Shown: in pieces, positions 41,001-62,434 of the stretch
Layout: each line of letters begins with the position of its first letter
Position numbering within the stretch: position 1 is the first letter of the stretch
Assembly (NCBI RefSeq): GCF_964188315.1
Contig: NC_135667.1
Span: 14,694,001-14,758,000 of the forward strand
Length of the DNA: 64,000 nucleotides
Reading direction: 5' to 3'
From: Podarcis muralis
Taxonomy: Eukaryota
Program-made: the position numbers and the translations under genes
The notes under the pieces: generated by a model
Told to the model about the DNA's origin: nothing
What the model saw: only the letters and a program-made list of their open reading frames with translations
The model's database searches: none

Positions 41001-43107
41001 CCTACTCCTGCACACCTAAGAAGGAGAAGAAGCATCTGCTGCTGGCTCCTTCTTTGAGCTCTTCTCTCCCTCCAGGAGGGAAGCAGCATTGGCTTATGAG
41101 GAATCAATTTATCAAGAAGGAGAAGGGTGGACATAGATGACAATATGATTTCAGTAGAGAAGCAAGCTAATTCCATTCAAAATCTCTTGCGTGTCATTAC
41201 CATTAGATGCTGCCCATTTCCACCTGTGTTGAGAGTTGCCACCCTGGACAGAGTATGTTTGCCCAGCAGGAAAAGCAAATCTGTTGCTATGACTGTGTTC
41301 AGTGCCCTAAAGGGATGATTTCAGTCCAGAAGGGTAAGTGAAGAAACCTGATAAAAAAATTCCTTCCAGTAGCACCTTAGAGACCAACTAAGTTAGTTAC
41401 AGTGGTACGTCGGGTTACATATGCTTCAGGTTACAGACTCCACTAACCCAGAAATAATAGCTCGGGTTAAGAATTTTGCTTCAGGATGAGAACAGAAATC
41501 ATGCTCCGGCGGTCCAGCAGCAGCAGGAGGCCCCAATAGCTAAAGTGGTGCTTCAGGTTAAGAACAGTTTCAGGTTAAGAACGGACCTCCGGAACAAATT
41601 AAGTACTTAACCCAAGGTACCACTGTATTGGTATGAGCTTTCGTGAAGAAACCCGACTCAACTGGAATTCCAATCTTCCTCTCCAATATTCATGTCTTAG
41701 TCTTATTGTGTCTGCTTATTTTCTGTCATGGATGCCACGCAAATGTGTTTATGTTACTGATACATATTCTTCTTTAATCTCCCCTCCCCTTTTGACAGCC
41801 ATTCTAGAGTATATTGTGTGAAATTACGTCCACATAGGAGTAACCACCATTGAAATCAGCATTAAATACATCTCGGTAGAAACTCTGTAGATTCCCTTTT
41901 GTCAGCATTGAACCTGCAGCAAAGAAATTTGCATCTTCTGTTACTTACAAGTAGAGTTAGACATGTTTAATAGGAAAAGACTGAAATCAATCAGTATACT
42001 CTAACCATGACAAATAAATATGAATGGATTGATTAGTACAGCTGAGATGCTCATGGAGGAACCATCACTTAGTTGTGAAAGTAGACTTTGCTTCATCAGC
42101 TCAGTAATATGTTTTGTGTACAGCATAACAGACGGTGTCAATAATATTAATAAGTATCGCTTCAAGAAATGCTAAAAGCATGCTTCTCACTTTCAGATGC
42201 AGATCAGTGTGAGAAATGCCCCAATGATCACTACCCAAATGCCTTTCACAACCAATGTATTCCCAAAAAAATAAGCTACCTATCCTATGAGGAGCCCTTG
42301 GGGGCAATTCTGGCCTCCTTGGCTCTCCTGCTTTCTCTGGTCACAATTGTTGTGATGGGGACCTTCGGTCTGCACTGGAACACTCCCATTGTCAAAGCCA
42401 ACAACTGGGGCATCACCTGCACCTTGCTCTCTTCTCTGCTTCTCTGCTTTCTCTGCTCCTTCTTATTCATTGGCAGGCCTACAAAGGTGACCTGTGTCTT
42501 GAGGCAAACCGTCTTTGGCATCGTCTTCTCCATTGCTGTGGCTTGTGTGTTAGCCAAAACCCTCACTGTGGTTTTGGCATTCATGGTGACCAAGCCTGGG
42601 AACAGCCTGAGGAAATGGCTTGGGAAGAGGCTGGCAGGATCCCTTATCACCTTCTGCTCTCTCATTCAAGCTGGCATCTGTCTTGGGTGGCTGGCATCCT
42701 CTCCCCCATTCCCAGAGTTTGACCTACACTCCCAGGATGGGCAGATCATAGTGCAGTGCAATGAAGGCTCCGACATCATGTTCCACCTTATTCTCGGCTA
42801 CATGGGTCTTTTGGCCATTGTGAGCTTCTCTGTGGCTTTCTTTGCCAGGAAGTTGCCTGATACTTTCAATGAAGCCAAGTTGATTACCTTCAGCATGCTG
42901 GTCTTCTGCAGTGTTTGGCTGTCCTTTGTCCCCACTTATCTGAGCACCAAAGGGAAATACATGGTGGCTGTGGAGATCTTCTCCATCTTGGCCTCTACTG
43001 CTGGCTTACTGGGTTGCATCTTCCTCCCCAAAATCTACATCATTATATTTAGACCTGAGATGAACAGTAGAGAGAGGTTAGTAAGGAAGAAGGATGACCA
43101 TAGTTGA
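35095..43107 (+). CDS. Vomeronasal type-2 receptor V2R-D, complete 6-exon gene (~885 aa)
   Basis: Exons 35095-35345, 36708-36999, 37461-38309, 39072-39299, 41207-41333, 42197-43107 total 2658 bp and stay open; TA|T junction gives Tyr before AIPKNYQH; Cys-rich and 7TM motifs intact. Confidence 0.92.
35587..35755. mobile_element. hAT-like MITE with internal 22-bp tandem repeat containing TTAGGG
   Basis: 16-bp TIRs cagtggcgtagcgtgg / ccacgctacgccactg; 8-bp TSD atgtccct/gggtccct; unit gggttagggggcgcaaatccac about 3 times. Confidence 0.75.
39510..39750 (-). mobile_element. Old RTE-clade LINE RT fragment (also ~50540-50835)
   Basis: FGLTISL..ILGEDI...[16 protein letters not shown] resembles the RTE RT motif; shared by V2R-D and V2R-E intron 4. 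Confidence 0.6.
39869..40020 (+). mobile_element. tRNA(Ile)-headed SINE with CR1-like 3' tail
   Basis: tagctcagttggttaga...gctGATaacgccaagg..ggttcgatccc head (A/B boxes), then ggttggactagatgatcctcagggtcccttccaactcta; absent from V2R-E. Confidence 0.8.
40250..40624 (-). mobile_element. Young CR1 3' end (same family as 17203)
   Basis: Near-identical to 17203-17565; absent from V2R-E intron 4. Confidence 0.9.
41349..41642 (-). mobile_element. Very short Penelope 3'-terminal fragment, interrupted by a MITE
   Basis: ccttccagtagcaccttagagaccaactaagttagt..ttggtatgagctttc matches the Penelope end at 51361-51413; 11-bp TSD GTGAAGAAACC (41338-41348, 41643-41653); empty site at ~57425. Confidence 0.8.
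41400..41625. mobile_element. Tc1/mariner-type MITE nested in the Penelope fragment
   Basis: CAGTGGTAC TIRs, TA TSD; opposite orientation to 16712. Confidence 0.85.
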
Positions 43108-44519
43108 GAGGGTAAAAGAGATGGCGTTAGCCAGGGACCTTATGTTCTGGCAAGGAGATGTTATTTCCTTTGCTTTTATTTTGATCATCATTTCTTTGTT
43201 TGTATGTTCCATCTTCTCTGCCCTCCAAGGAGTACATAACTCTCCCTCTCTTGCTATTTCTCAAAAACTCTCTGAAAAAGCTTAGATTGAGAGATGCCAT
43301 CCTCCCCATGGCTGAATGGGGATTTCAACCCTAGTTTCCCAGGGCCTTGAACAACACACTCATCGCTACACATTAAGCTGGGGGCATGGGGTAGTTATGC
43401 TTCTTTTGTAAACTTTGCTAAATATCTGCATTTTTGTCCTCGATTTCTATACCCTCAAAAGACACACACATGCCAAGTAAGGAAAATTAACCCTCTGCTC
43501 ACCTGCTGCTGAGCAGAATGTGCAATGCTGTCACTTACTGTGATCTACTTCTCCAGGGTGTTGTCTGTGTGGAGAAACATGAGAATTGATTCAGGCCCAA
43601 ATCCAGGTCAGGCCTTCCTCAGGTCAGGTTGTGGCTAATGTTTTCAATATCCGTTAATTTTTAAAAGCAATCCTTATTTTCCTTTTGGTTATATATTTTT
43701 TCATTAAATTCACGTTACAGTAATCACAACATTCAGATATTGTATGTGAGTTCCATGATTGTACCAATATTCTAGGTATACAGCACAGTTAAGAGGACAG
43801 TTGTGTGCTCTTAAGAGATCTCTGGCATATTAGAGAGGGAGGTTTGGAAGAGAAATTCTTACTCTCTCTTTGCAGAGTTGGAACAATGGGGATTGCTCCA
43901 AGCACCTTAACATTTGGTTTGATTTGCATCTGCCCTCATTCAGCTTTAAACAGATATTCCCCATAAAAATACTGAGGCTAGAATAAATCACAGACACTTA
44001 ACTTTGCAAATAAGTGACAATTTTACTCAACAAATGTCCATCCACTGGATAGTAAAAGTAAAAAAAAAACAACTTCCCAATGATTTAAAAAGAGGAAAAA
44101 ATAGCATTTCTTCACAAATGGAATCACACAATCCTTTTGCTAGGTTTTAGAGAGAAACTTCGTTCACATGGCTTTTCTTCAGCTGAGAGCAATAGCTCGG
44201 CTAACAGCTTCTTCCAGGAAGACAGAGGGAGGGAGGAACCAAATGGTTTGAAGCTTCAGGACCTGCAATACTTAGACTTAATGAAATCCATTAGTTTGAT
44301 CCCCCACCCACCCCTATGTTCCTTAACATCTACATGAAGCCATTGAGCAGGTTCTTCAGGACTATTGGAGTAAATTTGTCAACAATATACTGGTGAAACA
44401 CAGCTCTCTACTTTTCCTCTACATCTGCAGGTGTGGTTGTGGATGTCTTGCCTCACTAGTGGACTAGTTTGGAGCCAATAAACTGAAGCTCAATCCAAAT
44501 ATGACTGACAACTGTTAGT

Positions 44520-46853: not shown

Positions 46854-49800
46854 ATGATGACCTCCAGCTGCAGTTCAGCACAAAAATGGTTAGCGCTCCA
46901 CCTGCTTTTCTGCTGTTGGAGCTGCATTGTTCTTCTAGCAAGTATTTGAACTCCTCCACAAGCAGATTGCGACAACCAATTCAAACACCTTCATNNNNNN
47001 NNNNNNNNNNNNNNNNNNNNNNNNNNNNNNNNNNNNNNNNNNNNNNNNNNNNNNNNNNNNNNNNNNNNNNNNNNNNNNNNNNNNNNNNNNNNNNNNNNNN
47101 NNNNNNNNNNNNNNNNNNNNNNNNNNNNNNNNNNNNNNNNNNNNNNNNNNNNNNNNNNNNNNNNNNNNNNNNNNNNNNNNNNNNNNNNNNNNNNAAAGAG
47201 CTTAAGTTTGTTTCCTGGATAGCCCCTGCTTTTTGCCCATATGGGCTCCATCCACAACCTAGTTCAGGTTTTCAAGCTGCTTGAAACCCATAGATTTTGC
47301 AACCCATCCCTATGCCAAGTACGCCTCACTCCACCCCCACCCCCCAGCATGCATTGGCTTCTAATCAAAAAGGGCAAACCTATGCATATCTACTCTGAAG
47401 TAATCACCACTGACTTATAAGTGGCTGCAACCGGAATGCAGCTTAAATCATATTTCTGTGAGAGCCACTTTTATGAAAGCCAAGGGGATGCTTCCTCTCA
47501 AATATTTGGACATAACGGATCACATGACACAGTGCATGCACACCATTTGAATCGCAATGCTTTGGGGGGGGAGGCTTTTTGGGGGGAGGCTTTTTACACA
47601 AGGGTAAAAAGCCCTTGTGTTTTGGAGCACACTGGTATACTCAATGGTTGTTCTACAGGTTGAATTAAGAACACATTCCCATGAATACTTCATGGTTCGG
47701 AAATGGAAGGGAGGTGTGGTGGACAAAGCAGCAGAACAAGAGGTAGGCATGGACATTGTGTTTAAGAGAGAGGCAAAAGGGGTTAACAGAAGAACTTAAC
47801 AGCTTTTTATTTCTGGGTTTCCCATATCCAAACCCACAAATTCATCAACAGCACGACAATGAATCCCTTTGAATTCACCATTTACATAAATCTAATCAAA
47901 ATATATAAGGAGACTGCTCTAGTTTCATTAGTTTGAATATAATGTTCCCTTCCTATGGGTTGCAACATTCAAGGTACGTGGATTCTCAAATCAAAACTGA
48001 AACACAGTTGTTTCTCTTCCGCCAGTGTTGCAGTCATTCTTCGTCTCATTGCAGAATGATCCCAAAAAACTTCCAGCATGTTCTTGCCTTCATCTTTGCC
48101 ATGCAAGAGATCAACAAGCATGCCAAATTCTTCTCCAACATCACACTGGGATCAACATTTTATGAGAATGCTTTTAATCCTTTGCTAACTTGTTGGAACA
48201 CTCTTGCTCTTCTTTTCATGGGACAACGAAATCCCCCCAATTACCACTGTAATGGGGAAGATAGATTAATTGCCGTCGTTGGAGGGCTCACCTCCCAAAA
48301 CTCCATTGAGATGGCCAATATATTAAACACCTACAAGATTCCACAGGTATGTGTGTAGATACATAGATAAAACCACAAGGGCAGACATAGACAGAAAACC
48401 CCAAAAGAGCATCCATGTTAGCTTTCAATCCTAATACGGTATGTTTTCTACACTTGTTTCCTACATTAGACTTGGTATGGGTACATGATTATGTTAAAGC
48501 CTCCAAGCATTGGGATTTGGGGGGGGGGATAAACCCATAATACTAATAATCCAAGCTCTGGTTCTTCCAAACCTGGCCATTCCACAAATCATGTTATCAT
48601 AGGAGCATCCAGCTTCCTGCTTAGAAACTTCTCCTGGCCTGAAAACTAATGACACCAGGGCTATATACTTAGAAAAGTAAGACCAGGTGGATAACTACAA
48701 CAATACAGAAGTATTCTTTCTAGGAACAAATGGATGGTTTTCGGATTCCTAGAAAAAGATTGCCTTTTCCTTTAGCTCAGCTATGGCTCCTTGGATCCAG
48801 GGCTGAGTGACCAAAGGCGCTTCCCTTCCTTCTTCCAAATGGTCCCCAATGAAGAAGCTCAGTATGGTGGCATTGTCTGGCTACTCAGGAAGTTTGGGTG
48901 GAACTGGATTGGCCTCCTTGTTTCAGATGATGACAGTGGAGAAACCTTCCTTCGTACTCTCAGACCAAGGCTTTTCCAAAATAATCTTTGCATTTCTTGG
49001 ACACTGGTGATCCCACTAGTGACAGTATTTTTACCTTATGAGCTACTTCAAGAAAAATTGAGACCAATCATGTATGTTCTCACACGGCAGCAAATGAATG
49101 TGATTCTTGTCTATGGAGACAGTCAGTCTCTAGAGGGTTTGAGACTGATTTTAGTCTCCTTTGAGATTTTGTCTATGTACCCAGTGGAGAGGGTCTGGAT
49201 TACAACAGCTCAATGGGATTTCACTGCAGTGCTGGTTGGAGGCAATTTTCCTTCCATATCCTTCAATGGCACTTTGTCATTTACACTCCATTCAAATCCA
49301 GTTCCTGGGTTTCAGGACTTTCTACAGACCATAAATCCATGGCAGCCAAATCTTTATTTCATCCAGCAGTTCTGGGCCAGTGCATTTCTCTGTTCATTCC
49401 CAGTTCACAATCTAATTGACACAACTCAGGGACCCTGCACTGGGAGGGAGAAGCTGGAGAAACTCACTGGACCCGTGTTTGAAATGGAAATGTCCAGCCA
49501 GAGCTACACCATCTACAATGCCGTCCATGCAATAGCACATGCTCTCCATAGCATGTATTCCTCAAGAACCAAACTGAAAGTACTGGGTGAGAAATGGAGA
49601 CAGCAGAAAGTTCAGCCCTGGCAGGTACTGTCAACTACTCTCCTCAATGTTAGAAGCACAAGAGTTATTATTACTGATTCATATGTTGCACCTCTGAGCC
49701 CTGGCATGGAGGATGGGCCTTGGGGATTTTCCCTGGTGAGCTCTATCATTGGGAGGGACTTGATCTCAGCGAAAGACCAAATGCTTTGCATGCTGCACAT

Positions 49801-50386
49801 TCAAAGCTTGTTAAATTAATCTATCCCAGGATTCTCCTACTTGGAGCTGCACAAGGACCAGAAGTGTCCTCTGTTATAAGAACTGGGTTGAAACCTCTAA
49901 TGTATGCCATATAGCACTGTGGCAATTTAGAGTAGACAGTTCTGGGCTACAGAGACCAATGATTGCACTCAGCACATGGCAGTTTCACATGTTAATGGGG
50001 GAATTTTTATGAAGTATATATGATAAAATGTAGTAAGAATCCAAAGGTCCACCTGCCAAATGGGAGAGAGAGAGAGTGTGTATTAGCCTACAAGGTCTGT
50101 GTCTTTTTTCCTCTTGCAATCTAGCTCCACTCCTTTCTGAAGAACATCCACTTCAACAACAGTGCTGGGGAAGAAATCTCTTTGGATGAGAAGGGGCAGC
50201 AGGCAGGTGGCTATGATCTCCTCAACTTGGTCACATATCCCAATGAGTCCTTCCAGAGAGTCCGAGTGGGGAGGGTGGACCCTCAGGCCCCCCCAGGAAA
50301 AGAGTTCACAGTGGATGGAAGTGCCATCGCATGGAATCCCAAGTTCAAGCAGGTGCGTGTGACCATTTTTTATTTTTTTATCCTCT

Positions 50387-50425
<39 letters not shown>

Positions 50426-53400
50426 TTTTATGAGAAGATCAAGAGATCCAGGAAAACAGTGATGGCTACAAAGGAGAATTGTGAGGAGCGAAGCTCTGGT
50501 ACTCACTGATAAAATACTGTTTTTGTTTCTTTTGTTCAAATTTGTTGATCCAAAGCTAGTTTGAAGCTAATTTGGAGCTCAGTGTTCAGAACAAGGTATT
50601 TCTGAGTAAGGAATCTGCAAGTGTTTAAAGCTCTTGAAAAGGGACTGTTGTCCTCCAAAATGTGTTGTTGGCAACAATCTCTGCCAGGCAGAGCCCAAGT
50701 AGAAAGAAAATCATCCACCACCTGAAGTGTGGTGTCACTAATGTTGATGGATGGAGTGCCAGTGATATCCTGTCCCAGGATGTTGGTCTCCATCAGGCTG
50801 ATGGTGAGGCCAAACTCCATGCAGGCTTGGCCATAATTCTTGTTTTTGGTTTTTTGAATAAATCTTTATTAATTTAAAATACAATCATACAATAAAGGTA
50901 AGTATAACAAAATTAAGCACAAAAAAGAAAAAAGGAGAAAAAAGGAGAAAAAAGGGATTAGTCACCTCAAAAAGGGCGAAAAGGGGTTTAAAAGCAACAA
51001 GAAAAGAAAAAAGGACAATTAAAAGAACCAAATATTTATACAACATCATGTCTTTTCCACTAAAGTTTTCTGTAAAAGACTTCCAATCGTACTCATTATA
51101 CTTTTTCTAGTGTCTTGGTTTTGTCGCACAGTTTGTTTTATATCTTTTTCCATATATTCCTCTAAGATGTTTATTCCATTATTTATTGTACACAAATATC
51201 ATTCAGTTCTGCTATGATGGTATCATTTTTACAATATAGTCTTATATATTCCTTAAATATTTTCCATTCTCCGTATACTTTTTGATTTAAGGCTCCCCTG
51301 ATTTTTCCAGTTACAGATAGGTAGCCGTGTTGGTCTGCCATAGTCAAAACAAAACAAAATCCTTCCAGTAGCACCTTAAAGACCAACTAAGTTAGTTCTT
51401 GGTATGAGCTTTCGTGTGCATGCACACTTCTTCAGATACACTGAAACAGAAGTTGCCAGATCCTTCTATATAGTGAGAGGGTGGGGAGGGGTATTACTCA
51501 GAAGGGTGGTGGGAATGGGTGATTGGCAGATAGCTGTGATGAGCCTGTTGACGACTCTTAACTACTGCAATAGGTCTTACAGGAAAAAGCAAGGGGTGAG
51601 AAGGTGAAAAATGGCTTTGTCATGTATAATGAGATAAGAATCCAATGTCTTTGTTCAGACCAGGTTTCTCCATGGTTTTAAGTTTGGTAATGAGTTGCAA
51701 TTCAGCAGCTTCTCTTTCCAGTCTATTTCTGAAATTCCTTTGTAGTAAAACAGCTACTTTGAGATCTTGTATAGAATGTCCTGGGAGATTGAAGTGTTCT
51801 CCTACTGGTTTCTCTGTCTTGTGATTCTTGATGTCAGATTTATGTCCGTTTATTCTTTGGCGTAAGGTTTGGCCTGTTTGTCCAATATAGAGAGCTGAAG
51901 GACACTGTTGGCATTTGATGGCATACACAATGTTAGACAATGAGCAATTAAATAGTCCCGAGATGGTATGTGTGATGTTGTTGGGGCCAGTAATGGTGTT
52001 GTCCGGGTGTATGTGGCAGCAAAGTTGGCATCTGGGTTTATTGCAGGCTCTGGTGCCAGTGTCCGTATTAAGTCTGGTTGTAGTATTATTGTGGGTTAGG
52101 AGTTGTTTAAGATCTTCACCGCCTCCATTGCATCTGCAGAAAACAGCAGCAGGAGACTTTTTCAGGTAGTTCGCAATCTATCGGAACCACCTGCACCACC
52201 GGGGCCTGGTAGGGACCCCAAGATCTCCTGCAATGCTTTTGCAAAGTTTTTTGCAGATAAAGTCGCTCAGATTCAGAAGGAGGTAGACTCCACCGTGGGA
52301 GCAGGGCCAGGGTGGGAGAGTGCTAGAGTTCTGTCTGGTCCTGTTACATGGGATCAATTCCAATCTGTTACCTCCGAGGATGTGGACAGGCTGCTTGGAC
52401 AAGTGAAACCGACCACCTGTCTCCTGGATCCTTGCCCATCCTGGCTGATAAAAGCGAGCCGGGAAGGGCTGGGCGATGGGCTCTGCGGGGTGGTGAATGC
52501 TTCCCTCTATGAGGGAGCCTTCCCAGACCCGCTGAAAGAGGCGGTCATTAAACCGCTTCTTAAAAAAACATCTTTAGACCCAGCCAATTTGGCCAACTAT
52601 CGCCCAGTCTCAAATTTACCATTCTTGGGCAAGGTGATTGAGCGGGTGGTTGCCAGACAACTCCAAGCACGCCTGGAGGATGCGGACCATTTGGATCCCT
52701 TCCAATCGGGATTCAGGCCTCACCATGGGACTGAAACTGCCTTGGTCGCGCTGGTTGATGATCTCCGGCGGGCTAGGGACAAAGGTGAGAGCTGTTTCCT
52801 AGTTCTGCTGGATCTCTCAGCGGCTTTTGACACCATCGACCATAACATCCTTCTGGACCATCTAGAGGGGCTGGGAGCTGGGGGCACTGTTATACGGTGG
52901 TTCCGCTCCTTTCTCCTGGGCCGTGTCCAGAAAGTGGTGGTGGGGGATGAGTGTTCAGACCCCTGGGCTCTCACTTGTGAGGTGCCTCAGGGTTCCGTCC
53001 TCTCCCCCATGCTTTTTAATATCTATATGAAGCCGCTGGGAGAGATCATCAGGGGGTTTGGGCTGGGTGTTCATCAGTATGCAGATGACACCCAGCTCTA
53101 CCTCTCCTTTAAATCAGAACCAGTGAAGGCGGTGAAGGTCCTGTGTGAGTGCCTGGAGGCTGTTGGAGGATGGATGGCGGCTAACAGATTGAGGCTGAAT
53201 CCTGACAAGACAGAAGTACTGTTTTTGGGGGACAGGGGGCGGGCAGGTGTGGGGGATTCCCTGGTCCTGAATGGGGTAACTGTGCCCCTGAAGGACCAGG
53301 TGCGCAGCCTGGGAGTCATTTTGGACTCACAGCTGTCCATGGAGGCACAGGTTAATTCTGTGTCCAGGGCAGCTGTTTACCAGCTCCACCTGGTACGCAG

Positions 53401-56400
53401 GCTAAGACCCTACCTGCCCGCAGACTGTCTTGCCAGAGTGGTGCATGCTCTAGTTATCTCCCGCTTGGACTACTGCAACGCGCTCTACGTGGGGCTACCT
53501 TTGAAGGTGACCCGGAAACTGCAATTAATCCAGAATGCGGCCGCTAGACTGGTGACTGGGAGTGGCCGCTGGGACCACATAACACCAGTTCTGAGAGATC
53601 TGCATTGGCTCCCAGTACGTTTCCGAGCACAATTCAAAGTGTTGGTGCTGACCTTTAAAGCCCTAAACGGCCTCGGTCCAGTATACCTGAAGGAGCGTCT
53701 CCACCCCCATCGTTCAACCTGGGCACAGAGGTCCAGCGCCGAGGGCCTTCTGGCGGTTCCCTCATTGCGAGAAGTAAGGTTACAGGGAACCAGGCAGAGG
53801 GCCTTCTCGGTAGTGGCTCCTGCCCTGTGGAACGCCCTCCCAGCAGATGTCAAAGCAATAAACAACTATTTTACTTTTAAAAGTCATCTGAAGGCAGCCC
53901 TCTTTAGGGAAGTTTTTAATGTTTGATGCTGTACTGTTTTTAATATTCAGTTGGAAGCCGCCCAGAGTGGCTGGGGAAACCCAGCCAGATGGGCGGGGTA
54001 TAAATAATAAATTATTATTATTATTATTATTATTGGGTGGCTGTCTGTAGGCAATGAAAGGTCTTCCTCCCAGAGCTTGAGAAAGAGAACTGTCATTGTC
54101 CAGGAGAGGTTGTAGATCTCTGATGATGTGTTGTACTGTTTTAACTTGGGAGCTGTATGTGATGACTAGAGGTGTTCTGTTATTTTCTTTTTTGGGTCTG
54201 TCTTGCAGCAAGTTCTCTCTGGGTATCAGTCTGGCTCTGTTGATCTGTTGTCTAACTTCATCTGCTGGGTATTTTAGTTCTAAAAAGGTTTGCTGTAGAT
54301 CTCTTAGGTGAGAGTCTCAACATCTTCACGGCAGATTTAGAACAACGTTTCCTAAACTCCTACCCACTCAAACCTCTCTTGTACCTGCGATACATTGACG
54401 ATATTTTTATCATCTGGACACATGGTCAACAGACCCTGGACACCTTCCACCAGAAATTTAATGATTTTCACCCCACAATCAACCTAACAATGAATCAATC
54501 TATGCAAGAAATACATTTTTTGGACACTACTATAAAAATACAGGATGGGCGCATAGACACCACCTTATACCGTAAACCAACTGACCGACAGACATATCTA
54601 CATGCCTCTAGCTACCATCCCAAACATACCAAACAGTCCATTGTATATAGCCAGGCACTACGTTACAGCCGTATCTGTTCCAATTCTACAGACAGAGACT
54701 CTCACCTAAGAGATCTACAGCAAACCTTTTTAGAACTAAAATACCCAGCAGATGAAGTTAGACAACAGATCAACAGAGCCAGACTGATACCCAGAGAGAA
54801 CTTGCTGCAAGACAGACCCAAAAAAGAAAATAACAGAACACCTCTAGTCATCACATACAGCTCCCAAGTTAAAACAGTACAACGCATCATCAGAGATCTA
54901 CAACCTCTCCTGGACAATGACAGTTCTCTTTCTCAAGCTCTGGGAGGAAGACCTTTCATTGCCTACAGACAGCCACCCAATCTTAAACAACTCCTAACCC
55001 ACAATAATACTACAACCAGACTTAATACGGACACTGGCACCAGAGCCTGCAATAAACCCAGATGCCAACTTTGCTGCCACATACACCCGGACAACACCAT
55101 TACTGGCCCCAACAACATCACACATACCATCTCGGGACTATTTAATTGCTCATCGTCTAACATTGTGTATGCCATCAAATGCCAACAGTGTCCTTCAGCT
55201 CTCTATATTGGACAACAGGCCAAACCTTACGCCAAAGAATAAACGGACATAAATCTGACATCAAGAATCACAAGACAGAGAAACCAGTAGGAGAACACTT
55301 CAATCTCCCAGGACATTCTATACAAAATCTCAAAGTAGCTGTTTTACTACAAAGGAATTTCAGAAATAGACTGGAAAGAGAAGCTGCTGAATTGCAACTC
55401 ATTACCAAACTTAAAACCATGGAGAAACCTGGTCTGAACAAAGACATTGGATTCTTATCTCATTATACATGACAAAGCCATTTTTCACCTTCTCACCCCT
55501 TGCTTTTTCCTGTAAGACCTATTGCAGTCGTTAAGAGTCGTCAACAGGCTCATCACAGCTATCTGCCAATCACCCATTCCCACCACCCTTCTGAGTAATA
55601 CCCCTCCCCACCCTCTCACTATATAGAAGGATCTGGCAACTTCTGTTTCAGTGTATCTGAAGAAGTGTGCATGCACACGAAAGCTCATACCAAGAACTAA
55701 CTTAGTTGGTCTTTAAGGTGCTACTGGAAGGAATTTTTTTTTTGTTCTGATTTTTCCAGTCAGCTTTGCTAATTGGAAATACTCGGTTGTCGGGGAACTG
55801 CCATCAGTACTGGAGGGGGAGCGCAAAAGCCAGAGGGATTCCAGAGAGCGTCCAGGGATCGGTAGGAGCAGCCCATCTTCTGGGGAAGAGAATCAGCGTA
55901 GCACCAGTGGAGAAGGGGGGCAGGTGGGGGAAGTGGCGAGGCGGTCCCATGACTCCTTGCCTGGGACCAGCGGGGAGAGTAGGGGTCCTCCGGTGCCCAC
56001 GCCCTCCCTGCGCAGAAGGCTTTCGCGCAGAGAGGGTAGGCGGCGACTAGGCATCAAAGAACTTCTTTGCTGGAAGAAGTTTAAGAAACGCCCACTCACG
56101 GATTCTGCCAGCGATTGAGTCAGCCACGGGTGAGTGGCTGCCCGGACAGAAGAGGTTCACTTTGGCAGCCCAGCCAGGTGTTTGCACCCAGCCAGGGAGA
56201 TAGGCACCTGCTTACGCACGAGCAACCCCTAGAACCATTACATCAGTCATGAGTGTTTGCCAATCTGTTACTGTTGGTGTTGTTTCACATTTCCAACTTC
56301 TGGCTACAAGTATTCTTGCAGCCATGATTGCGTACATAAACAGTGGTCTTGTGTTTTGCTTGATTTCCATTGGCAATATTCCTAATAGGAAAATCTCCGG

Positions 56401-59105
56401 CCTTTTTTTGATTGTAAGTTTAAATAATTTCTTGAATTCGTCATATATGTTATTCCAAAATTCACTTATAATTATGCAGGTCCGCCACATGTGATAGTAA
56501 GACCCTATTTGGGGAATGAAAGTATCAATGCTAAGGAAAGGGCTAATGCTCAGAAGGCTATTGAATGCTGTGCTGTCATAGGCCTGAGGTAGTTGATGGA
56601 TGGATTGAATTTATATACCGCCCTATACCCAGAGGTCTCAGGACGGTTCCCAGAATAAGATCAACGTATAAAACCACAAAATACATAATGAATACATACA
56701 TAATGCATAATGAAAATAAAAAACCCAATAGCCGCCCACAAAAAACCCTGTACATTTTAAGAGGGAATAGTTATGTCAATTTCTACAGCTATGGCAGTTA
56801 TGAGCAGTCTAAACAGTTAGAGCAGCAGGAATGTTCTCTTGTGCTGCTGTCAGTCTGTAACAGTATTTATCTGAGATAAAAATATACCTAAGATGTATTA
56901 GCAATGTAAGTAACACCTACCTGCATTGTATAGTTTAATCTGAAAGTTCAAGTACATTTGGTAAGAAGGAGAAGCAGCATCTGCTGCCGGCTCCTTATTC
57001 CAGCTCTCGTCTCCCTCCAGGAGGGAATCAGCATTGGGTTATGAGGAATCAATCAATCAAGAGGGAGAAGGTTGGCACAAGCTTCTCTTTGCCATTCAGA
57101 CATGTGCTGGGCTGGCCAAATGGTTAAGTGACAGCACAAAGTATCTTTATCAGGGGGCCTGGTGCTTGCCCAGGGAGCATGTGCTTGACAGCCATCCTCT
57201 AATTTCAGTCCTGTGACCTTTCAGCTGCAAAGCGGACATAGACGACAATAAGATTTATTCCATTCAAAATCCCTTGCTTGTCATTCCCATTAGATGCTGC
57301 CCATTTCCACCTGTGTTGAGAGCTGCCACCCTGGACAGAGTATGTTTCCCCAGCAGGGAAAGCAAATCTGTTGCTATGATTGTGTTCAGTGCCCTAAAGG
57401 GAGGATTTCAGTCCAGAAGGGTAAGTGAAGGAACCCAAGTCAACTGGAATTCTTCCTATCCAACTTCGACATTGATTTCTTAGTCTTATTATGTCTGCTT
57501 ATTTTCTGTCATAGATCCCAAGCACATGTGTTTATATGTTACTGATACATATTGTCCTTTCCTCTCTCCTCCCCTTTGGATAGCCATTCAAGAGTATATT
57601 GTGTGAAATAACGTTCACATGGGAGTAACTACCATTGAAATCAAGATGACATACATCTGGGAAGAAATAATTAGGATTGCACCCCATAGATTCCCTTTTT
57701 GTCAACATTGAACCTGCAGCCAATCAATTTTCATCTTCTGTGATTAACAACTTGTGAACAATTTTCTCTATTGTATCCGTACAGTTTCAGTCCTTAGGCA
57801 CAGTTCTTTCTTGTCAAATATAGATTTTCCCAGTGAGCAAATGACAGGCTACCTAGCTGTTTCATCCACTCCCAAATTCAATTATGGAAAGTGCAAAAAA
57901 GAAACACTTGGGCCAGAAGCTTTGAAATGCAAAGACATGGGGCTGGATGCAGAGATAGACATGTTTAAGGGGGAAAGACTGAAATCAATCAGTATACACA
58001 AAGCCTGACAAATAAATATGAATGGATTGATTAGTACAGCTGAGGTGCTCATGGAGGAACCATCACTTAGTTGCGAAAGTAGACTTTGGTTCATCAGTTC
58101 AGTAATATGTTTTGTGTACCGCATAACAGACGGTATCAATAATATTAATAAGTATCGCTTCCAGAAATGCTAAAAGCATGCTTCTCATTTTCAGATGCAG
58201 ATCAATGTGAGAAATGCCCAGATGATCACTACCCAAATGCCTTTCAGGACCAATGTATTCCGAAAAAAATAAGCTACCTATCCTATGAGGAGCCCTTGGG
58301 GGCAATGCTGGCCTCCTTGGCTCTCCTGCTTTCTCTGGTCACAGTTGTTGTGATGGGGACCTTCGGTCTGCACTGGAACACTCCCATTGTCAAAGCCAAC
58401 AACTGGGACATCACCTGCACCTTGCTCTCTTCTCTGCTTCTCTGCTTTCTCTGCTCCTTCTTATTCATTGGCAGGCCTACAAAGGTGACCTGTGTCTTGA
58501 GGCAAACCGTCTTTGGCATCGTCTTCTCCATTGCTGTTGCTTGTGTGTTAGCCAAAACCCTCACTGTGGTTCTGGCATTCATGGTGACCAAGCCTGGGAA
58601 CAGCCTGAGGAAATGGCTTGGGAAGAGGCTGGCAGGATCCCTTATCGCCTTCTGTTCTCTCATTCAAGCTGGCATCTGTCTTGGGTGGCTGGCATCCTCT
58701 CCCCCATTCCCAGAGTTTGACCTGCACTCCCAGGATGGGCAGATCATAGTGCAGTGCAATGAAGGCTCCGACGTCATGTTCCACTTTATTCTCGGCTACA
58801 TGGGTCTTTTGGCCATTGTGAGCTTCTCTGTGGCTTTCTTTGCCAGGAAGTTGCCTGATACTTTCAATGAAGCCAAGTTGATTACCTTCAGCATGCTGGT
58901 CTTCTGCAGTGTTTGGCTGTCCTTTGTCCCCACTTATCTGAGCACCAAAGGGAAATACATGGTGGCTGTGGAGATCTTCTCCATCTTGGCCTCTACTGCT
59001 GGCTTACTGGGTTGCATCTTCCTCCCCAAAATCTACATCATTATACTTAGACCTGAGATGAACAGTAAAGAGAGATTAGTAAGGAAGAAGGATGACCATA
59101 GTTGA
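46854..59105 (+). CDS. Vomeronasal type-2 receptor V2R-E (paralog of V2R-D); exon 1 incomplete and apparently frameshifted next to an assembly gap
   Basis: Exon 1 runs from 46854 into the N gap; exons 48055-48346, 48776-49624, 50125-50352, 57294-57420, 58195-59105 are open with canonical splice sites; coding status unresolved. Confidence 0.75.
46995..47194. other. Assembly gap (200 N)
   Basis: Run of N; round length suggests a placeholder of unknown true size. Confidence 0.99.
50389..50424. repeat. (CAT)12 microsatellite in V2R-E intron 4
   Basis: Direct reading; shorter, interrupted version at ~39327-39347 in V2R-D. Confidence 0.95.
51402..51439 (-). ncRNA. Minimal type I hammerhead ribozyme motif (Penelope inverted arm)
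   Basis: Reverse complement is identical to 55653-55690. Confidence 0.75.
52114..54033 (+). mobile_element. L2 (CR1 superfamily) LINE, 5'-truncated, open RT frame (ORF 52103-53926)
   Basis: [66 protein letters not shown]; L2 3'UTR and (ATT)n tail; splits the Penelope arm at aagat|tgggtgg. Confidence 0.93.
55653..55690 (+). ncRNA. Minimal type I hammerhead ribozyme motif (Penelope sense arm)
   Basis: GTAT-CTGAAGA-A-GTGTGCATGCACAC-GAAA-GC-TC-ATAC: CUGANGA and GAAA core, palindromic stem II, AGCU palindromic stem III, GUAU/AUAC stem I; predicted cleavage 3' of C55686. Confidence 0.78.
55776..56235. mobile_element. Unclassified GC-rich 460-bp insertion inside the L1 fragment
   Basis: Interrupts the L1 reading DVM|LAKL; abrupt GC shift; no TSD or TG..CA termini identified. 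Confidence 0.5.
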
Positions 59106-59655
59106 GAGGTTGAAAGAGATGCCGTTAGCCAGGGAGCTTATGTTCTGGCAAGGAGATGTTGAATTTCTTTTTATTTCCCTTCTTGTCTTCCATCCAATGA
59201 GTTCATGGTAGGATAGACTGAGAGATGGTATCTGAGCCATAGTTGAATGGGAATTTGAACCCAGTTTTCCTAGCTCGTAGTACAACACACTAATCACCAC
59301 ACTTTATGTTGAGACCATTTTGTTAATAATAATCTCTGGAAACAATAACATCAGTTAGAAAGATATAGAATGCAAAGCCTAATGAAAATAGATTTGACCC
59401 CTTTTCCTATGAGAAACCCAACTTTAAAAAAATGAGGAAAAGATGGTGATATGCAAAAATTAGATGGAAGCGGGTATATTGACTTTGGATCAATCGATAG
59501 ATGATGAAGATGAATTTTTAGCATTCTGTGTGTTATGAGATAAATATCAGCTATTGGATGTAACCAAATAGTAACATCTACAGCTTCAACATTTGTTAGC
59601 AACTTTGCTTTGGCCAGCTGCATTTTCAGCTTCTGAGACACTTTTTTTAGAAACC

Positions 59656-61486: not shown

Positions 61487-62434
61487 ATGGAACTGAAGAA
61501 CCAGTCAGCAGTTCAAGATTTTATTTTGCTCGGCTTATCCAGCTCCCCTGAACATCAGAAAATCATATTTTGGGGATTCACTTTAATCTATGCAACTGCT
61601 TTGTCAGCCAACTTCCTCTTCATCTTCACTTTAAGCACTTGCCGCAAACTCCACACCCCCATGTATTTCCTGCTCATCCATTTGTCCATAGCAAACATGT
61701 TTTGTATCTCGGTGACAATTCCCAAGATGCTCCAGACTACTTTGGCCTCCAGGAAGACCATCTCATTTTCCGGCTGCATAGCCCAGGTCTACTTTTTCTT
61801 GTGGGCTCTGGGAACAGAGATATTGCTGCTTTCCTTTATGGCCTTTGATCGCTTCATCGCCATCTGCCATCCTTTGCAGTACACAGTCATCATGAGGAGG
61901 GAAGTGTACATCGGGGTGGTGGCTGGAGTGTGGGTGGCGGGGATGATCAATTCTGCCGTTCACACGGGGCTTGTGCTTCGCCTTTCCTTCTGTGACTCCA
62001 ACATCATCAACCACTTCTTCTGTAACTTGCCTCCTTTGCTGATGTTGTCTTGCTCAGACATCAGCCTCAATGAAGCCATGGCTTATGTAGCTGATGCGGT
62101 CTTCTCCATGGGTAGCTGTTTGCTGACGCTAACATCGTATTTGTTGATTCTGAATACCATCTTTAGAATTCAATCTACTGAAGGGAAGAAGAAAGCCTTC
62201 TCCACTTGCTCTTCCCACCTCCTTGTTGTCAGCTTCTACTTTTCCACCATCATCTACACATACATCAGGCCTACCTCAACTGCATCCCAAGAAGAAGACA
62301 AGGTTATTGCTATCCTTTATTCAGTGGTGACTCCTGTGCTCAACCCTGTCATATATTCCTTGAGAAATAAAGAAGTTAAAGAAGCACTGAAGAAGCTCAC
62401 AAGTAGAACCCTGCTGAGAGTTAGTGTTGGGTAG
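61487..62434 (+). CDS. Olfactory receptor, class II, intronless (315 aa); overall family-13-like resemblance
   Basis: LHTPMYFLL, MAFDRFIAICHPLQY, HFFC, KAFSTCSSHL, PVLNPVIYSLRNKEVK; N-terminal NQS sequon. Confidence 0.95.
   Translation: MELKNQSAVQDFILLGLSSSPEHQKIIFWGFTLIYATALSANFLFIFTLSTCRKLHTPMYFLLIHLSIANMFCISVTIPKMLQTTLASRKTISFSGCIAQVYFFLWALGTEILLLSFMAFDRFIAICHPLQYTVIMRREVYIGVVAGVWVAGMINSAVHTGLVLRLSFCDSNIINHFFCNLPPLLMLSCSDISLNEAMAYVADAVFSMGSCLLTLTSYLLILNTIFRIQSTEGKKKAFSTCSSHLLVVSFYFSTIIYTYIRPTSTASQEEDKVIAILYSVVTPVLNPVIYSLRNKEVKEALKKLTSRTLLRVSVG

What the first reader, a model, noticed from the sequence alone, without database searches (positions are those of the whole stretch)
55653..55690. 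Hammerhead ribozyme motif lying sense within a vomeronasal receptor pre-mRNA
Seen: a complete minimal type I hammerhead core (stem I GUAU/AUAC, CUGAAGA, one extra A, palindromic stem II GUGUGCAUGCACAC, GAAA, then AGCU-C) about 180 nt after the Penelope ORF stop. It lies on the same strand as V2R-E, inside intron 4. Established: Penelope-like elements carry minimal hammerheads in their terminal repeats; a palindromic stem III implies dimer-dependent cleavage; an extra A after A9 is tolerated in a known viroid hammerhead. Inference: if active, it could cut the receptor pre-mRNA co-transcriptionally and alter V2R-E splicing or output.
Basis: partly seen in the sequence, partly recalled or inferred. 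Interest (0 to 1): 0.8.

Follow-up and report, generated by a model that had tools for sequence, protein, structure and literature searches.

The report
Ordinary Penelope retrotransposon hammerhead in intron
The 38-base hammerhead ribozyme motif is real, but it is the standard small ribozyme found at the end of every Penelope-like retrotransposon, here a lone copy that landed in an intron of a vomeronasal receptor gene and is very unlikely to cut that gene's RNA.

Summary
Window 55653-55690 (+) reads helix I GUAU/AUAC, CUGAAGA, one bulged A, helix II GUGUG-CAUG-CACAC, GAA, palindromic AGCU, then C17. The predicted cut is at 55686/55687. A structural descriptor finds it twice in the window and never in 300 shuffles.

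It lies 181 nt after the GIY-YIG ORF stop of a Penelope-like element (PLE) at 51312-55746, which is bracketed by a 14-bp target-site duplication. The element sits in intron 4 (50353-57293) of a + strand V2R gene.

All four hallmarks of the published metazoan PLE "min-HHR" are present. The extra A is one of those hallmarks, not an oddity.

It is part of 768-bp arms that are 99% complementary.

The inference that the motif cuts the V2R pre-mRNA is disfavoured for five reasons:
- There is only one sense copy.
- Published min-HHR monomers are inactive.
- A perfect complement lies upstream in the same transcript.
- The paralogous gene lacks the insertion.
- Two raw RNA runs show no pile-up of read ends at 55686/7.

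No V2R-E intron reads were available, so the inference is not directly refuted.

This scan already holds 93 hammerhead/Penelope notes on other DNA of this genome. The finding is ordinary.

The parts
55653..55690 (+). Minimal type I hammerhead motif, sense to the V2R gene. Parts: helix I 55653-56 / 55687-90; core CUGAAGA 55657-63; bulged A 55664; helix II 55665-78; GAA 55679-81; palindromic helix III strand AGCU 55682-85; C17 55686. Predicted cut at 55686/55687.
51402..51439 (-). Identical twin hammerhead motif in the inverted arm. It is antisense to the V2R gene, so in the pre-mRNA this stretch is the exact complement of 55653-55690.
51312..55746 (+). Fold-back Penelope-like element insertion. 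It consists of an inverted 3'-end copy, then the body, then the 3' end.
51298..51311 (.). Left copy of the 14-bp target-site duplication CTGATTTTTCCAGT.
55747..55760 (.). Right copy of the 14-bp target-site duplication.
51346..52113 (-). Upstream inverted arm, about 768 nt and 99% complementary to 54980-55746. It carries a GIY-YIG ORF (51620-51940) and the twin hammerhead. Its tail runs on to 51312.
54980..55746 (+). Downstream arm: the end of the PLE ORF, the 3' untranslated part with the hammerhead, and the tail.
52103..53926 (+). PLE ORF piece with the reverse transcriptase domain (RVT_1, E 7.7e-36).
54379..55472 (+). C-terminal PLE ORF pieces, 54379-55242 and 55179-55472. They overlap in different frames, so the frame is broken around 55179-55242. 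This is the GIY-YIG region, and the stop is at 55472.
54027..54318 (-). Internal inverted duplicate of 54695-54986. It interrupts the PLE ORF between its two pieces.
55691..55746 (+). PLE 'tail' downstream of the cut site, ending in a T run. The same tail closes an independent truncated copy at 41353-41398 (-).
50125..50352 (+). V2R exon 4 (open frame, GT donor at 50353).
57294..57420 (+). V2R exon 5 (cysteine-rich linker; AG acceptor at 57292-93, GT donor at 57421).
58195..59105 (+). V2R exon 6 (7tm_3 domain, E 2.6e-84).
48791..49819 (+). ORF containing V2R exon 3 (ANF_receptor ligand-binding domain).

Best explanation
This is the standard minimal hammerhead ('min-HHR') that Penelope-like retrotransposons carry in their terminal repeat. 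Here it is the single sense copy at the 3' end of a young, rearranged, non-autonomous fold-back PLE insertion in intron 4 of a V2R gene.

How such a motif works is inferred from the anatomy and the literature. It has no helix III hairpin. The four bases A15.1-G-C-U16.1 are self-complementary, so two copies pair with each other, in a tandem transcript or in trans. They form a 'double hammerhead' in which helix I and helix III are intermolecular. Each unit cuts the other after C17. The reaction probably needs the element's own protein or another chaperone. Its role belongs to the retrotransposon's RNA processing, not to the host gene.

In the V2R pre-mRNA the motif is a passenger. It has no sense partner. 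It is a poor folder on its own. It faces a perfectly complementary upstream arm that would lock it into a long duplex. The expected effect on the receptor transcript through ribozyme cleavage is nil or negligible.
For: Shown here:
- The full motif is present and is non-random: 2 hits in the window against 0 in 300 shuffles.
- RVT_1 and GIY-YIG domains are in the same element.
- A 14-bp target-site duplication brackets 51312-55746.
- The inverted arms are 768 bp and 99% complementary.
- The twin motif lies on the opposite strand.
- There is no further sense copy in 64 kb.
- The insertion is absent at the homologous place of paralog gene D.
- The hammerhead-plus-tail stretch (about 55651-55741) is covered far more deeply than the PLE body in DNA contigs and in raw RNA. 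Head-to-tail joints (55741 to 55653, 55715 to 55653) and head-to-head joints are also seen, so it is a mass-produced repeat unit.
- No begin/end pile-up occurs at 55686/7.
- Fold energies: monomer hammerhead fold -6 to -10 kcal/mol with z = 0.25; double-hammerhead dimer -11.1 against a competing dimer at -30.6; duplex with the upstream arm -117.

From papers:
- PMC4209133 lists the min-HHR hallmarks (a nucleotide between 9 and 10.1, the G10.1-C11.1 pair, palindromic 15.2-16.2, short helix I, long helix II, location in PLTRs). It reports thousands of copies per genome, including reptiles, an inactive single motif and weakly active dimers.
- PMC11167929 reports that the Anolis Poseidon_Ac hammerhead cuts only with PLE protein, that no RNA-seq ends occur at its site, and that the PLE protein cleaves and extends both DNA strands.
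- The Poseidon_Ac consensus shows the same build across its unit junction: CUGAGGA, a bulged U, helix II, GAA, ACGU, C.
Against: - No cleavage assay exists for this sequence family, and its exact sequence was not found in the searchable literature.
- Rfam's hammerhead models give no match, so the assignment rests on a descriptor and published hallmarks, not on a scored model.
- The RNA runs were bulk libraries of unknown tissue, not designed to capture 5'-OH or cyclic-phosphate ends. They held no reads from unique V2R-E intron sequence. Absence of cleavage in this transcript is therefore inferred, not shown.
- Hammerhead-bearing RNAs of the family are present in both orientations, so a trans partner is not strictly excluded.
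Confidence: 0.85

Rival explanations
1. The intronic hammerhead is active in the V2R-E pre-mRNA, either alone or by pairing in trans with other hammerhead-bearing PLE transcripts. It cuts co-transcriptionally and lowers or alters receptor mRNA output, as the intronic CPEB3 ribozyme does.
For: - The motif is sense, complete and in an intron, 1,607 nt upstream of exon 5.
- Family transcripts carrying the same motif are present in RNA runs.
- The 14-nt palindromic helix II could bring two copies together, at -28 kcal/mol.
- There is precedent for an intronic ribozyme competing with splicing: the CPEB3 ribozyme (PMC10919898, abstract).
Against: - There is a single sense copy in 64 kb.
- Published min-HHR monomers are inactive and dimers are weak, mostly at non-physiological Mg2+.
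- The PLE hammerhead tested in Anolis needs PLE protein, and this copy's own ORF is broken.
- An upstream perfect complement lies in the same transcript.
- The helix II trans duplex puts the two AGCU strands at opposite ends of a 14-bp helix, so it competes with the active fold rather than helping it (inference).
- No end pile-up occurs at 55686/7.
- The insertion is not conserved in the paralog.
Confidence: 0.04
2. The relevant host effect, if there is one, comes from the 768-bp inverted repeat and not from the ribozyme. The long intronic double-stranded RNA would influence editing, splicing or silencing of V2R-E, and the hammerhead would be irrelevant and masked.
For: - The arms 51346-52113 and 54980-55746 are 99% complementary.
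- Both arms lie inside intron 4 of the same transcript.
- The duplex energy dwarfs that of local folds.
Against: - There are no reads from this intron to show editing or altered splicing.
- Fold-back PLE insertions are common in this genome and are not known to matter for host genes.
- The substitution classes were not analysed and, pooled across family copies, could not show editing of this locus.
Confidence: 0.08
3. The motif is kept in the family for a reason other than cleavage. The hammerhead-plus-tail segment would be the RNA handle that the PLE protein recognises to start reverse transcription. The motif's abundance would then reflect template recognition, not catalysis.
For: - The roughly 90-nt hammerhead-plus-tail unit has sharp boundaries, with many unrelated upstream sequences meeting at 55651/55653 and 55740-42. 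It is far more abundant than the ORF.
- In Anolis, hammerhead core mutants did not affect in vitro insertion, reverse transcription starts internally near the tail, and cleavage needed bound protein.
Against: - The catalytic boxes, the G10.1-C11.1 pair and the palindromic helix III are conserved across very different PLE families. This is hard to explain without catalysis.
- C3/G8 compensatory rescue shows real ribozyme chemistry in Anolis.
Confidence: 0.1
4. It is a chance match to the hammerhead consensus with no biological meaning.
For: - The bare pattern CTGANGA...GAAA...TH occurs at chance frequency in the window: 8 observed against 7.5 expected.
- There is no Rfam hit.
Against: - The full structural descriptor gives 0 hits in 300 shuffles.
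- The motif sits exactly where PLE hammerheads sit and has four hallmarks that the search did not strictly demand.
- It is the core of a highly repeated unit.
Confidence: 0.01

Closest known systems
Metazoan PLE minimal hammerheads (min-HHR; Cervera and De la Pena 2014, PMC4209133; dimer cleavage in Lunse, Weinberg and Breaker, RNA Biol, cited in PMC6765202 but not readable here)
   Same: Type I topology. CUGANGA / GAAA / UH boxes. One unpaired nucleotide between A9 and G10.1. G10.1-C11.1 pair. No loop 3, and a palindromic 15.2-16.2 (AGCU). Helix I of 4 bp. Located in the non-coding end of a RT + GIY-YIG element. Mostly found as single, truncated or opposite-strand copies.
   Different: Helix II is 5 bp plus a palindromic CAUG loop, which makes a perfect 14-nt palindrome. 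The S. mansoni families have a helix II of 7-8 bp. The exact sequence was not found in the searchable literature. No activity data exist for this family.
Poseidon_Ac hammerhead of Anolis carolinensis (PMC11167929)
   Same: Same build: core, one bulged base, helix II, GAA, a four-base palindrome, then C. It lies in the repeat between ORF copies, and elements are arranged in tandem or inverted. Its biochemistry (protein-assisted cleavage, no RNA-seq ends at the cut site) is the best available guide to how this motif behaves.
   Different: In Poseidon_Ac the hammerhead overlaps the ORF start. Here it lies 181 nt after the ORF stop, and the ATG in its helix II loop opens only a 9-codon frame. The helix II and helix III sequences differ (ACGU there, AGCU here). 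The relation between the two elements' proteins was not compared.
Non-LTR retrozymes: short tandem hammerhead repeats of animals (PMC7229834; bioRxiv 10.64898/2026.07.22.740005)
   Same: Reads show head-to-tail joints of about 45-92-nt units carrying this motif. This fits the report that retrozymes derive from PLE terminal repeats and are present in reptiles.
   Different: The copy in the finding is solitary and is attached to a PLE body, not to a tandem array. Circular RNAs were not looked for.
Conserved intronic self-cleaving ribozymes of host genes (CPEB3 HDV-like ribozyme, PMC10919898; human intronic hammerheads HH9/HH10, Rfam RF02275/RF02277)
   Same: A self-cleaving motif lying sense inside an intron of a protein-coding gene.
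   Different: Those ribozymes are monomer-active and conserved at orthologous positions, and for CPEB3 the ribozyme is kinetically matched to splicing. This one is dimer-type and a recent transposon insertion that is absent from the paralog. It is masked by a complementary arm, and the Rfam models do not match it.

Membership tests
PLE minimal hammerhead (min-HHR) | Catalytic boxes C3-U-G-A-N-G-A9, G12-A-A14, A15.1/U16.1 and a non-G at position 17, in type I order | tested here: met
   55657-63 CUGAAGA, 55679-81 GAA, 55682 A, 55685 U, 55686 C
PLE minimal hammerhead (min-HHR) | [quoted passage not shown] | tested here: met
   A at 55664. The hallmark is stated in PMC4209133.
PLE minimal hammerhead (min-HHR) | G10.1-C11.1 closing pair of helix II | tested here: met
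   G55665 pairs with C55678
PLE minimal hammerhead (min-HHR) | Palindromic 15.2-16.2 with no stable helix III hairpin (dimer design) | tested here: met
   AGCU at 55682-85. The self-duplex scores -3.9 kcal/mol, and the nested double-hammerhead structure can be written and scores -11.1 kcal/mol.
PLE minimal hammerhead (min-HHR) | Short helix I (4-5 bp) and a helix II longer than the canonical 4 bp | tested here: met
   Helix I is 4 bp and helix II is 5 bp plus a 4-nt loop
PLE minimal hammerhead (min-HHR) | Located in the terminal repeat or non-coding end of an element encoding RT and GIY-YIG endonuclease | tested here: met
   RVT_1 E 7.7e-36, GIY-YIG E 1.3e-06. The motif is 181 nt after the ORF stop and 56 nt before the element's end.
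PLE minimal hammerhead (min-HHR) | Self-cleavage after position 17, as a dimer | not testable with these tools
   There is only indirect negative evidence: no read-end pile-up at 55686/7 in two raw RNA runs.
PLE minimal hammerhead (min-HHR) | Family-wide covariation in helices I and II | tested here: inconclusive
   The window's copies are one insertion event plus a fragment lacking the helices. The variant table is truncated and lists no position within 55653-55690.
Rfam hammerhead families (Hammerhead_1 RF00163, HH9 RF02275, HH10 RF02277, and others) | Score at or above the gathering threshold of the covariance model | tested here: not met
   No hammerhead match at gathering threshold on the window, nor at E up to 10 on 55300-56000. 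Presumably (my reading, not tested here) these models expect a helix III hairpin, which min-HHRs lack by design.
Penelope-like element | A single ORF with a reverse transcriptase followed by a GIY-YIG endonuclease | tested here: met
   In this copy the ORF is in pieces.
Penelope-like element | Tandem or inverted partial-copy architecture, bracketed by a target-site duplication | tested here: met
   Inverted arms and a 14-bp duplication at 51298-51311 / 55747-55760
Host-gene regulatory intronic ribozyme (CPEB3 / HH9 / HH10 type) | Conservation of the ribozyme at the homologous intron position in related genes or species | tested here: not met
   Paralog gene D lacks the 50843-56507 segment. The arms are 99% identical, so the insertion is young. 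Orthologs in other species were not examined.
Host-gene regulatory intronic ribozyme (CPEB3 / HH9 / HH10 type) | Active as a single copy within the host transcript | not testable with these tools
   The literature on min-HHR monomers says they are inactive. The fold z-score is 0.25.

The most novel reading that the evidence does not exclude
The lone intronic hammerhead is nevertheless cut in vivo. It would pair in trans with the abundant hammerhead-bearing PLE transcripts of the same family, nucleated by the 14-nt palindromic helix II or the AGCU palindrome and helped by PLE protein from active copies. Transposon expression would then cleave host pre-mRNAs wherever a sense copy sits in an intron. 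That would be a genome-wide, transposon-driven layer of transcript attenuation that includes V2R genes.
Probability: 0.03. Interest if true: 0.65.

Novelty: new member of a known kind. Interest (0 to 1): 0.13.

Why it matters
The finding matters little as it stands. It is one more copy of a ribozyme motif known since 2014 to sit in the ends of Penelope-like elements, with thousands of copies per genome in fishes, amphibians and reptiles.

It is useful as a clean, fully delimited example: a target-site duplication, fold-back arms, twin motifs on opposite strands and a truncated sibling nearby. It is also a reminder that the 'extra A' is part of the family signature.

It would matter only if lone intronic copies were shown to be cut in trans, because that would link transposon activity to host transcript levels. 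Nothing here supports that.

Tried and rejected
- **Rfam scans.** A scan at gathering threshold on the whole window and a scan at E up to 10 on 55300-56000 gave no hammerhead family. I did not take this as evidence against the motif, presumably because these models expect a helix III hairpin that min-HHRs lack (my reading, not tested).
- **Bare consensus pattern.** It occurs at chance frequency, so I replaced it with a structural descriptor.
- **Independent copies for covariation.** The window's only other relative is a 5'-truncated fragment at 41353-41645 (-) that starts inside the motif, so it is uninformative.
- **Literature search for the exact sequence or its tail.** There were no hits. 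The supplements of PMC4209133 are not held, and Lunse et al. (PMC5785218) is not held.
- **RNA evidence for V2R-E itself.** No RNA run holds the 7TM exon at high identity. The one RNA-like run with a spliced exon 5/6 contig shows a 96.5% paralog. No reads lie on unique intron stretches.
- **Helix II palindrome as a dimerisation aid.** I considered this and rejected it on geometry. The 14-bp trans duplex separates the two AGCU strands, and it is the thermodynamic competitor of the double-hammerhead fold (-30.6 against -11.1 kcal/mol).
- **Steps not run.** Protein-database searches and structure prediction were not run, because Pfam already settles the element's class. The clade of the element (Poseidon, Neptune or other) was not determined.
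Full report
**1. The observation**

- GUAU, helix I 5' strand
- CUGAAGA, positions C3 to A9
- one extra A
- GUGUG-CAUG-CACAC, helix II
- GAA, positions G12 to A14
- AGCU, positions A15.1, 15.2, 16.2 and U16.1
- C17
- AUAC, helix I 3' strand

The predicted scissile bond is 55686/55687. The bare consensus pattern occurs at chance frequency in the window, 8 matches against 7.5 expected. A structural descriptor behaves very differently. It demands helix I closure, a helix II, GAA, a palindromic A-NN-U and a non-G at position 17. It finds only this site and an identical one at 51402-51439 on the minus strand, and nothing in 300 dinucleotide-preserving shuffles of the window on both strands. A looser descriptor allows the U3-A8 core variant, 0-2 bulged bases and helix III hairpins, and it adds no further site. 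The motif is therefore real and not a chance match.

Rfam gives no hammerhead match at gathering threshold or at E up to 10. Presumably (my reading, not tested) the Rfam hammerhead models expect a helix III hairpin, which this motif lacks by design. As a monomer the 61-nt region does not fold better than shuffled sequence (z = 0.25).

**2. The surroundings**

*The element.* The motif lies 181 nt after the stop (55472) of an ORF piece. The equivalent ORF in the inverted arm matches the GIY-YIG endonuclease domain. A 607-aa ORF at 52103-53926 carries a reverse transcriptase domain with E 7.7e-36. A reverse transcriptase followed by GIY-YIG is the signature of Penelope-like elements (PLEs).

The element is a fold-back. 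Arms 51346-52113 and 54980-55746 are about 768 nt long and 99% complementary, with 4 mismatches and 3 gaps. The whole structure, 51312-55746, is bracketed by a perfect 14-bp direct repeat, CTGATTTTTCCAGT, at 51298-51311 and 55747-55760. It is therefore one integration event with a target-site duplication. This fits the report that a PLE protein cleaves and extends both DNA strands (PMC11167929).

The copy is defective. Its ORF is interrupted between 53926 and 54379 by a segment that includes an inverted duplicate of 54695-54986. Its last two ORF pieces overlap in different frames around 55179-55242.

*The host gene.* The host gene is a V2R on the + strand:
- ANF_receptor exon inside 48791-49819
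- exon 4, about 50125-50352, with a GT donor
- exon 5, 57294-57420, the cysteine-rich linker
- 7tm_3 exon, 58195-59105

These rest. A contig in one RNA-like run joins 57419 to 58194 across a GT..AG intron. It is 96.5% identical to the window, so it comes from a paralog. The motif is thus sense, in intron 4 (50353-57293), 1,607 nt upstream of exon 5.

The neighbouring paralog, gene D (36259-43171), aligns with this gene at 80-97% identity but lacks 50843-56507. The insertion postdates the gene duplication. The 99% identity of the arms also says it is young.

**3. What it is**

Cervera and De la Pena (PMC4209133) described 'min-HHRs' in the terminal repeats of all PLEs they examined. They found thousands per genome in coelacanth and Xenopus, and similar motifs in reptiles. 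The motifs occurred mostly as single copies, or as two copies on opposite strands 100-700 bp apart. They list features that emerged beyond their search descriptor:
- the G10.1-C11.1 pair
- a palindromic 15.2-16.2
- a short helix I (4-5 bp) with a longer helix II

Every one of these is present here.

The Poseidon_Ac consensus of Anolis carolinensis, read across its unit junction, has the same build: CUGAGGA, a bulged U, helix II, GAA, ACGU, C. The exact sequence of the present motif and tail was not found in the searchable literature. I therefore file it as a new member of a known kind.

**4. Evidence from public reads**

I laid two raw RNA runs, one RNA-like contig set and one DNA contig set of the same organism on 54990-59200 at 90% likeness.

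The bins holding the hammerhead and tail (55554-55835) are covered 5- to 25-fold more deeply than the bins over the PLE ORF end, in DNA and in RNA, and in both read orientations. Many unrelated upstream sequences meet the stretch at 55651/55653, which is the first base of helix I. Downstream sequences leave it at 55740-55742, mostly continuing as the sequence that also follows the tail of the minus-strand arm in the window.

Head-to-tail joints are seen (55741 to 55653, 55715 to 55653, 55693 to 55649), as are head-to-head joints (55580 with 55710). The hammerhead-plus-tail segment is therefore a mass-produced unit of about 90 nt. It occurs solo, in short tandems and in inverted pairs. This matches the description of PLE-derived non-LTR retrozymes (bioRxiv 10.64898/2026.07.22.740005).

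The scan's own index holds 93 notes with hammerhead and Penelope on other DNA of this genome. One followed-up case was judged an ordinary PLE product.

The table of places where many molecules begin or end lists nothing at 55686/55687, at a depth of roughly 280-350 reads per run. This agrees with the failure to find such ends for Poseidon_Ac. It is weak evidence, because the libraries are ordinary bulk RNA-seq of unknown tissue.

No reads lie on the unique intron stretches 56259-56540, 56823-57245 or 57528-58091. V2R-E pre-mRNA was therefore not sampled.

**5. How it most likely works**

*Mechanism.* Because AGCU is self-complementary and there is no loop 3, two copies can form a nested 'double hammerhead'. 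GUAU of unit 1 pairs with AUAC of unit 2, and the reverse. The two AGCU strands form a 4-bp helix III with a catalytic core at each end, and each unit keeps its own helix II hairpin. This structure can be written without pseudoknots and evaluates to -11.1 kcal/mol for two 38-mers.

It has strong competitors:
- The perfect 14-nt palindrome of helix II prefers a trans duplex (-28 kcal/mol against -5.5 for the hairpin; MFE dimer -30.6). That duplex would place the two AGCU strands at opposite ends.
- UUUCAG at 55646-51 can pair with CUGAAG at 55657-62 and hide the core.

These numbers ignore tertiary contacts. They do agree with published behaviour. A single min-HHR was inactive, and dimers were weakly active, mostly at non-physiological Mg2+. 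The Anolis PLE hammerhead cut only in the presence of its protein. The mechanism is inferred, not shown: dimer-dependent, chaperone-assisted self-cleavage that serves PLE RNA processing.

*In the V2R pre-mRNA.* Four points weigh against any effect on the receptor transcript:
1. There is no second sense copy in the window.
2. The upstream arm, transcribed first, is the exact complement of the motif. The 63-nt duplex around it scores -117 kcal/mol.
3. The element's own protein is broken.
4. Exon 5 follows only 1.6 kb downstream, so a slow ribozyme has little time to compete with splicing. The CPEB3 intronic ribozyme, which does affect its host mRNA, is kinetically matched to the transit time to the next exon (PMC10919898 abstract).

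I put the chance of meaningful ribozyme cleavage of the V2R-E transcript at about 4%.

**6. Comparison, novelty, verdict**

It works like, and passes every sequence-level membership test of, the metazoan PLE min-HHR. The catalytic test cannot be run here. It fails the Rfam hammerhead models. It also fails the conservation criterion of host-gene regulatory intronic ribozymes.

The finding is ordinary and scores low in interest.

Noticed in passing
window 41353-41645 (-): An independent 5'-truncated PLE end in the intron of paralog gene D. It starts inside the hammerhead (GAAAGCTCATACC...) and is split by a nested insertion of about 230 nt. It ends with the same tail and T run and is flanked by the direct repeat GGTTTCTTCAC. 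It lacks the catalytic core.
   Followed up: partly
window 55651-55741, seen through public reads: The hammerhead-plus-tail unit is covered 5-25 times more deeply than the PLE body in DNA and RNA runs. It has sharp boundaries at 55651/55653 and 55740-42. Rare head-to-tail joints (unit about 45-92 nt) and head-to-head joints are seen. This looks like a retrozyme-type non-autonomous derivative.
   Followed up: partly
window 55665-55678: Helix II plus its loop is a perfect 14-nt palindrome (GUGUGCAUGCACAC). A trans duplex (-28 kcal/mol) is far more stable than the hairpin (-5.5) and would compete with the active double-hammerhead fold.
   Followed up: partly
window 55646-55662: UUUCAG just upstream can pair with CUGAAG of the catalytic box. 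This alternative hairpin is part of the minimum-energy fold of the 53-nt region.
   Followed up: partly
window 54027-54318 and 54695-54986: A second, internal inverted duplication (292 nt, 99%) inside the PLE. It interrupts the ORF between the RT piece and the C-terminal piece. It is either a rearrangement or an assembly artefact.
   Followed up: no
window 50843-51311 and 55761-56507: Relative to paralog gene D, the inserted segment (50843-56507) is about 1.2 kb larger than the PLE itself. The extra flanks are an A/K-rich stretch on the left and a GC-rich stretch on the right that is moderately covered by reads. They were not identified.
   Followed up: no
window 39878-39936 (+): A tRNA-like match (Rfam tRNA, 33.7 bits, model positions 8-63 only) inside the intron of gene D. 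It is probably the head of a tRNA-derived SINE and not a tRNA gene.
   Followed up: no
window 10939-12477 (+): A 512-aa ORF with RVT_1 plus the ALKBH8_N-like segment. This is a non-PLE retrotransposon reverse transcriptase.
   Followed up: no
window 61487-62434 (+): An intact-looking olfactory receptor ORF (7tm_4, E 4.3e-50) immediately downstream of the V2R gene. More V2R exons lie on the minus strand in the first half of the window (22047-22853, 26094-26951).
   Followed up: no
window 57292-59158, run X18: One RNA-like run holds a spliced exon 5 to exon 6 V2R contig that is 96.5% identical to this gene. This is the same identity as paralog gene D, so a close paralog is transcribed while this copy was not seen.
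   Followed up: partly
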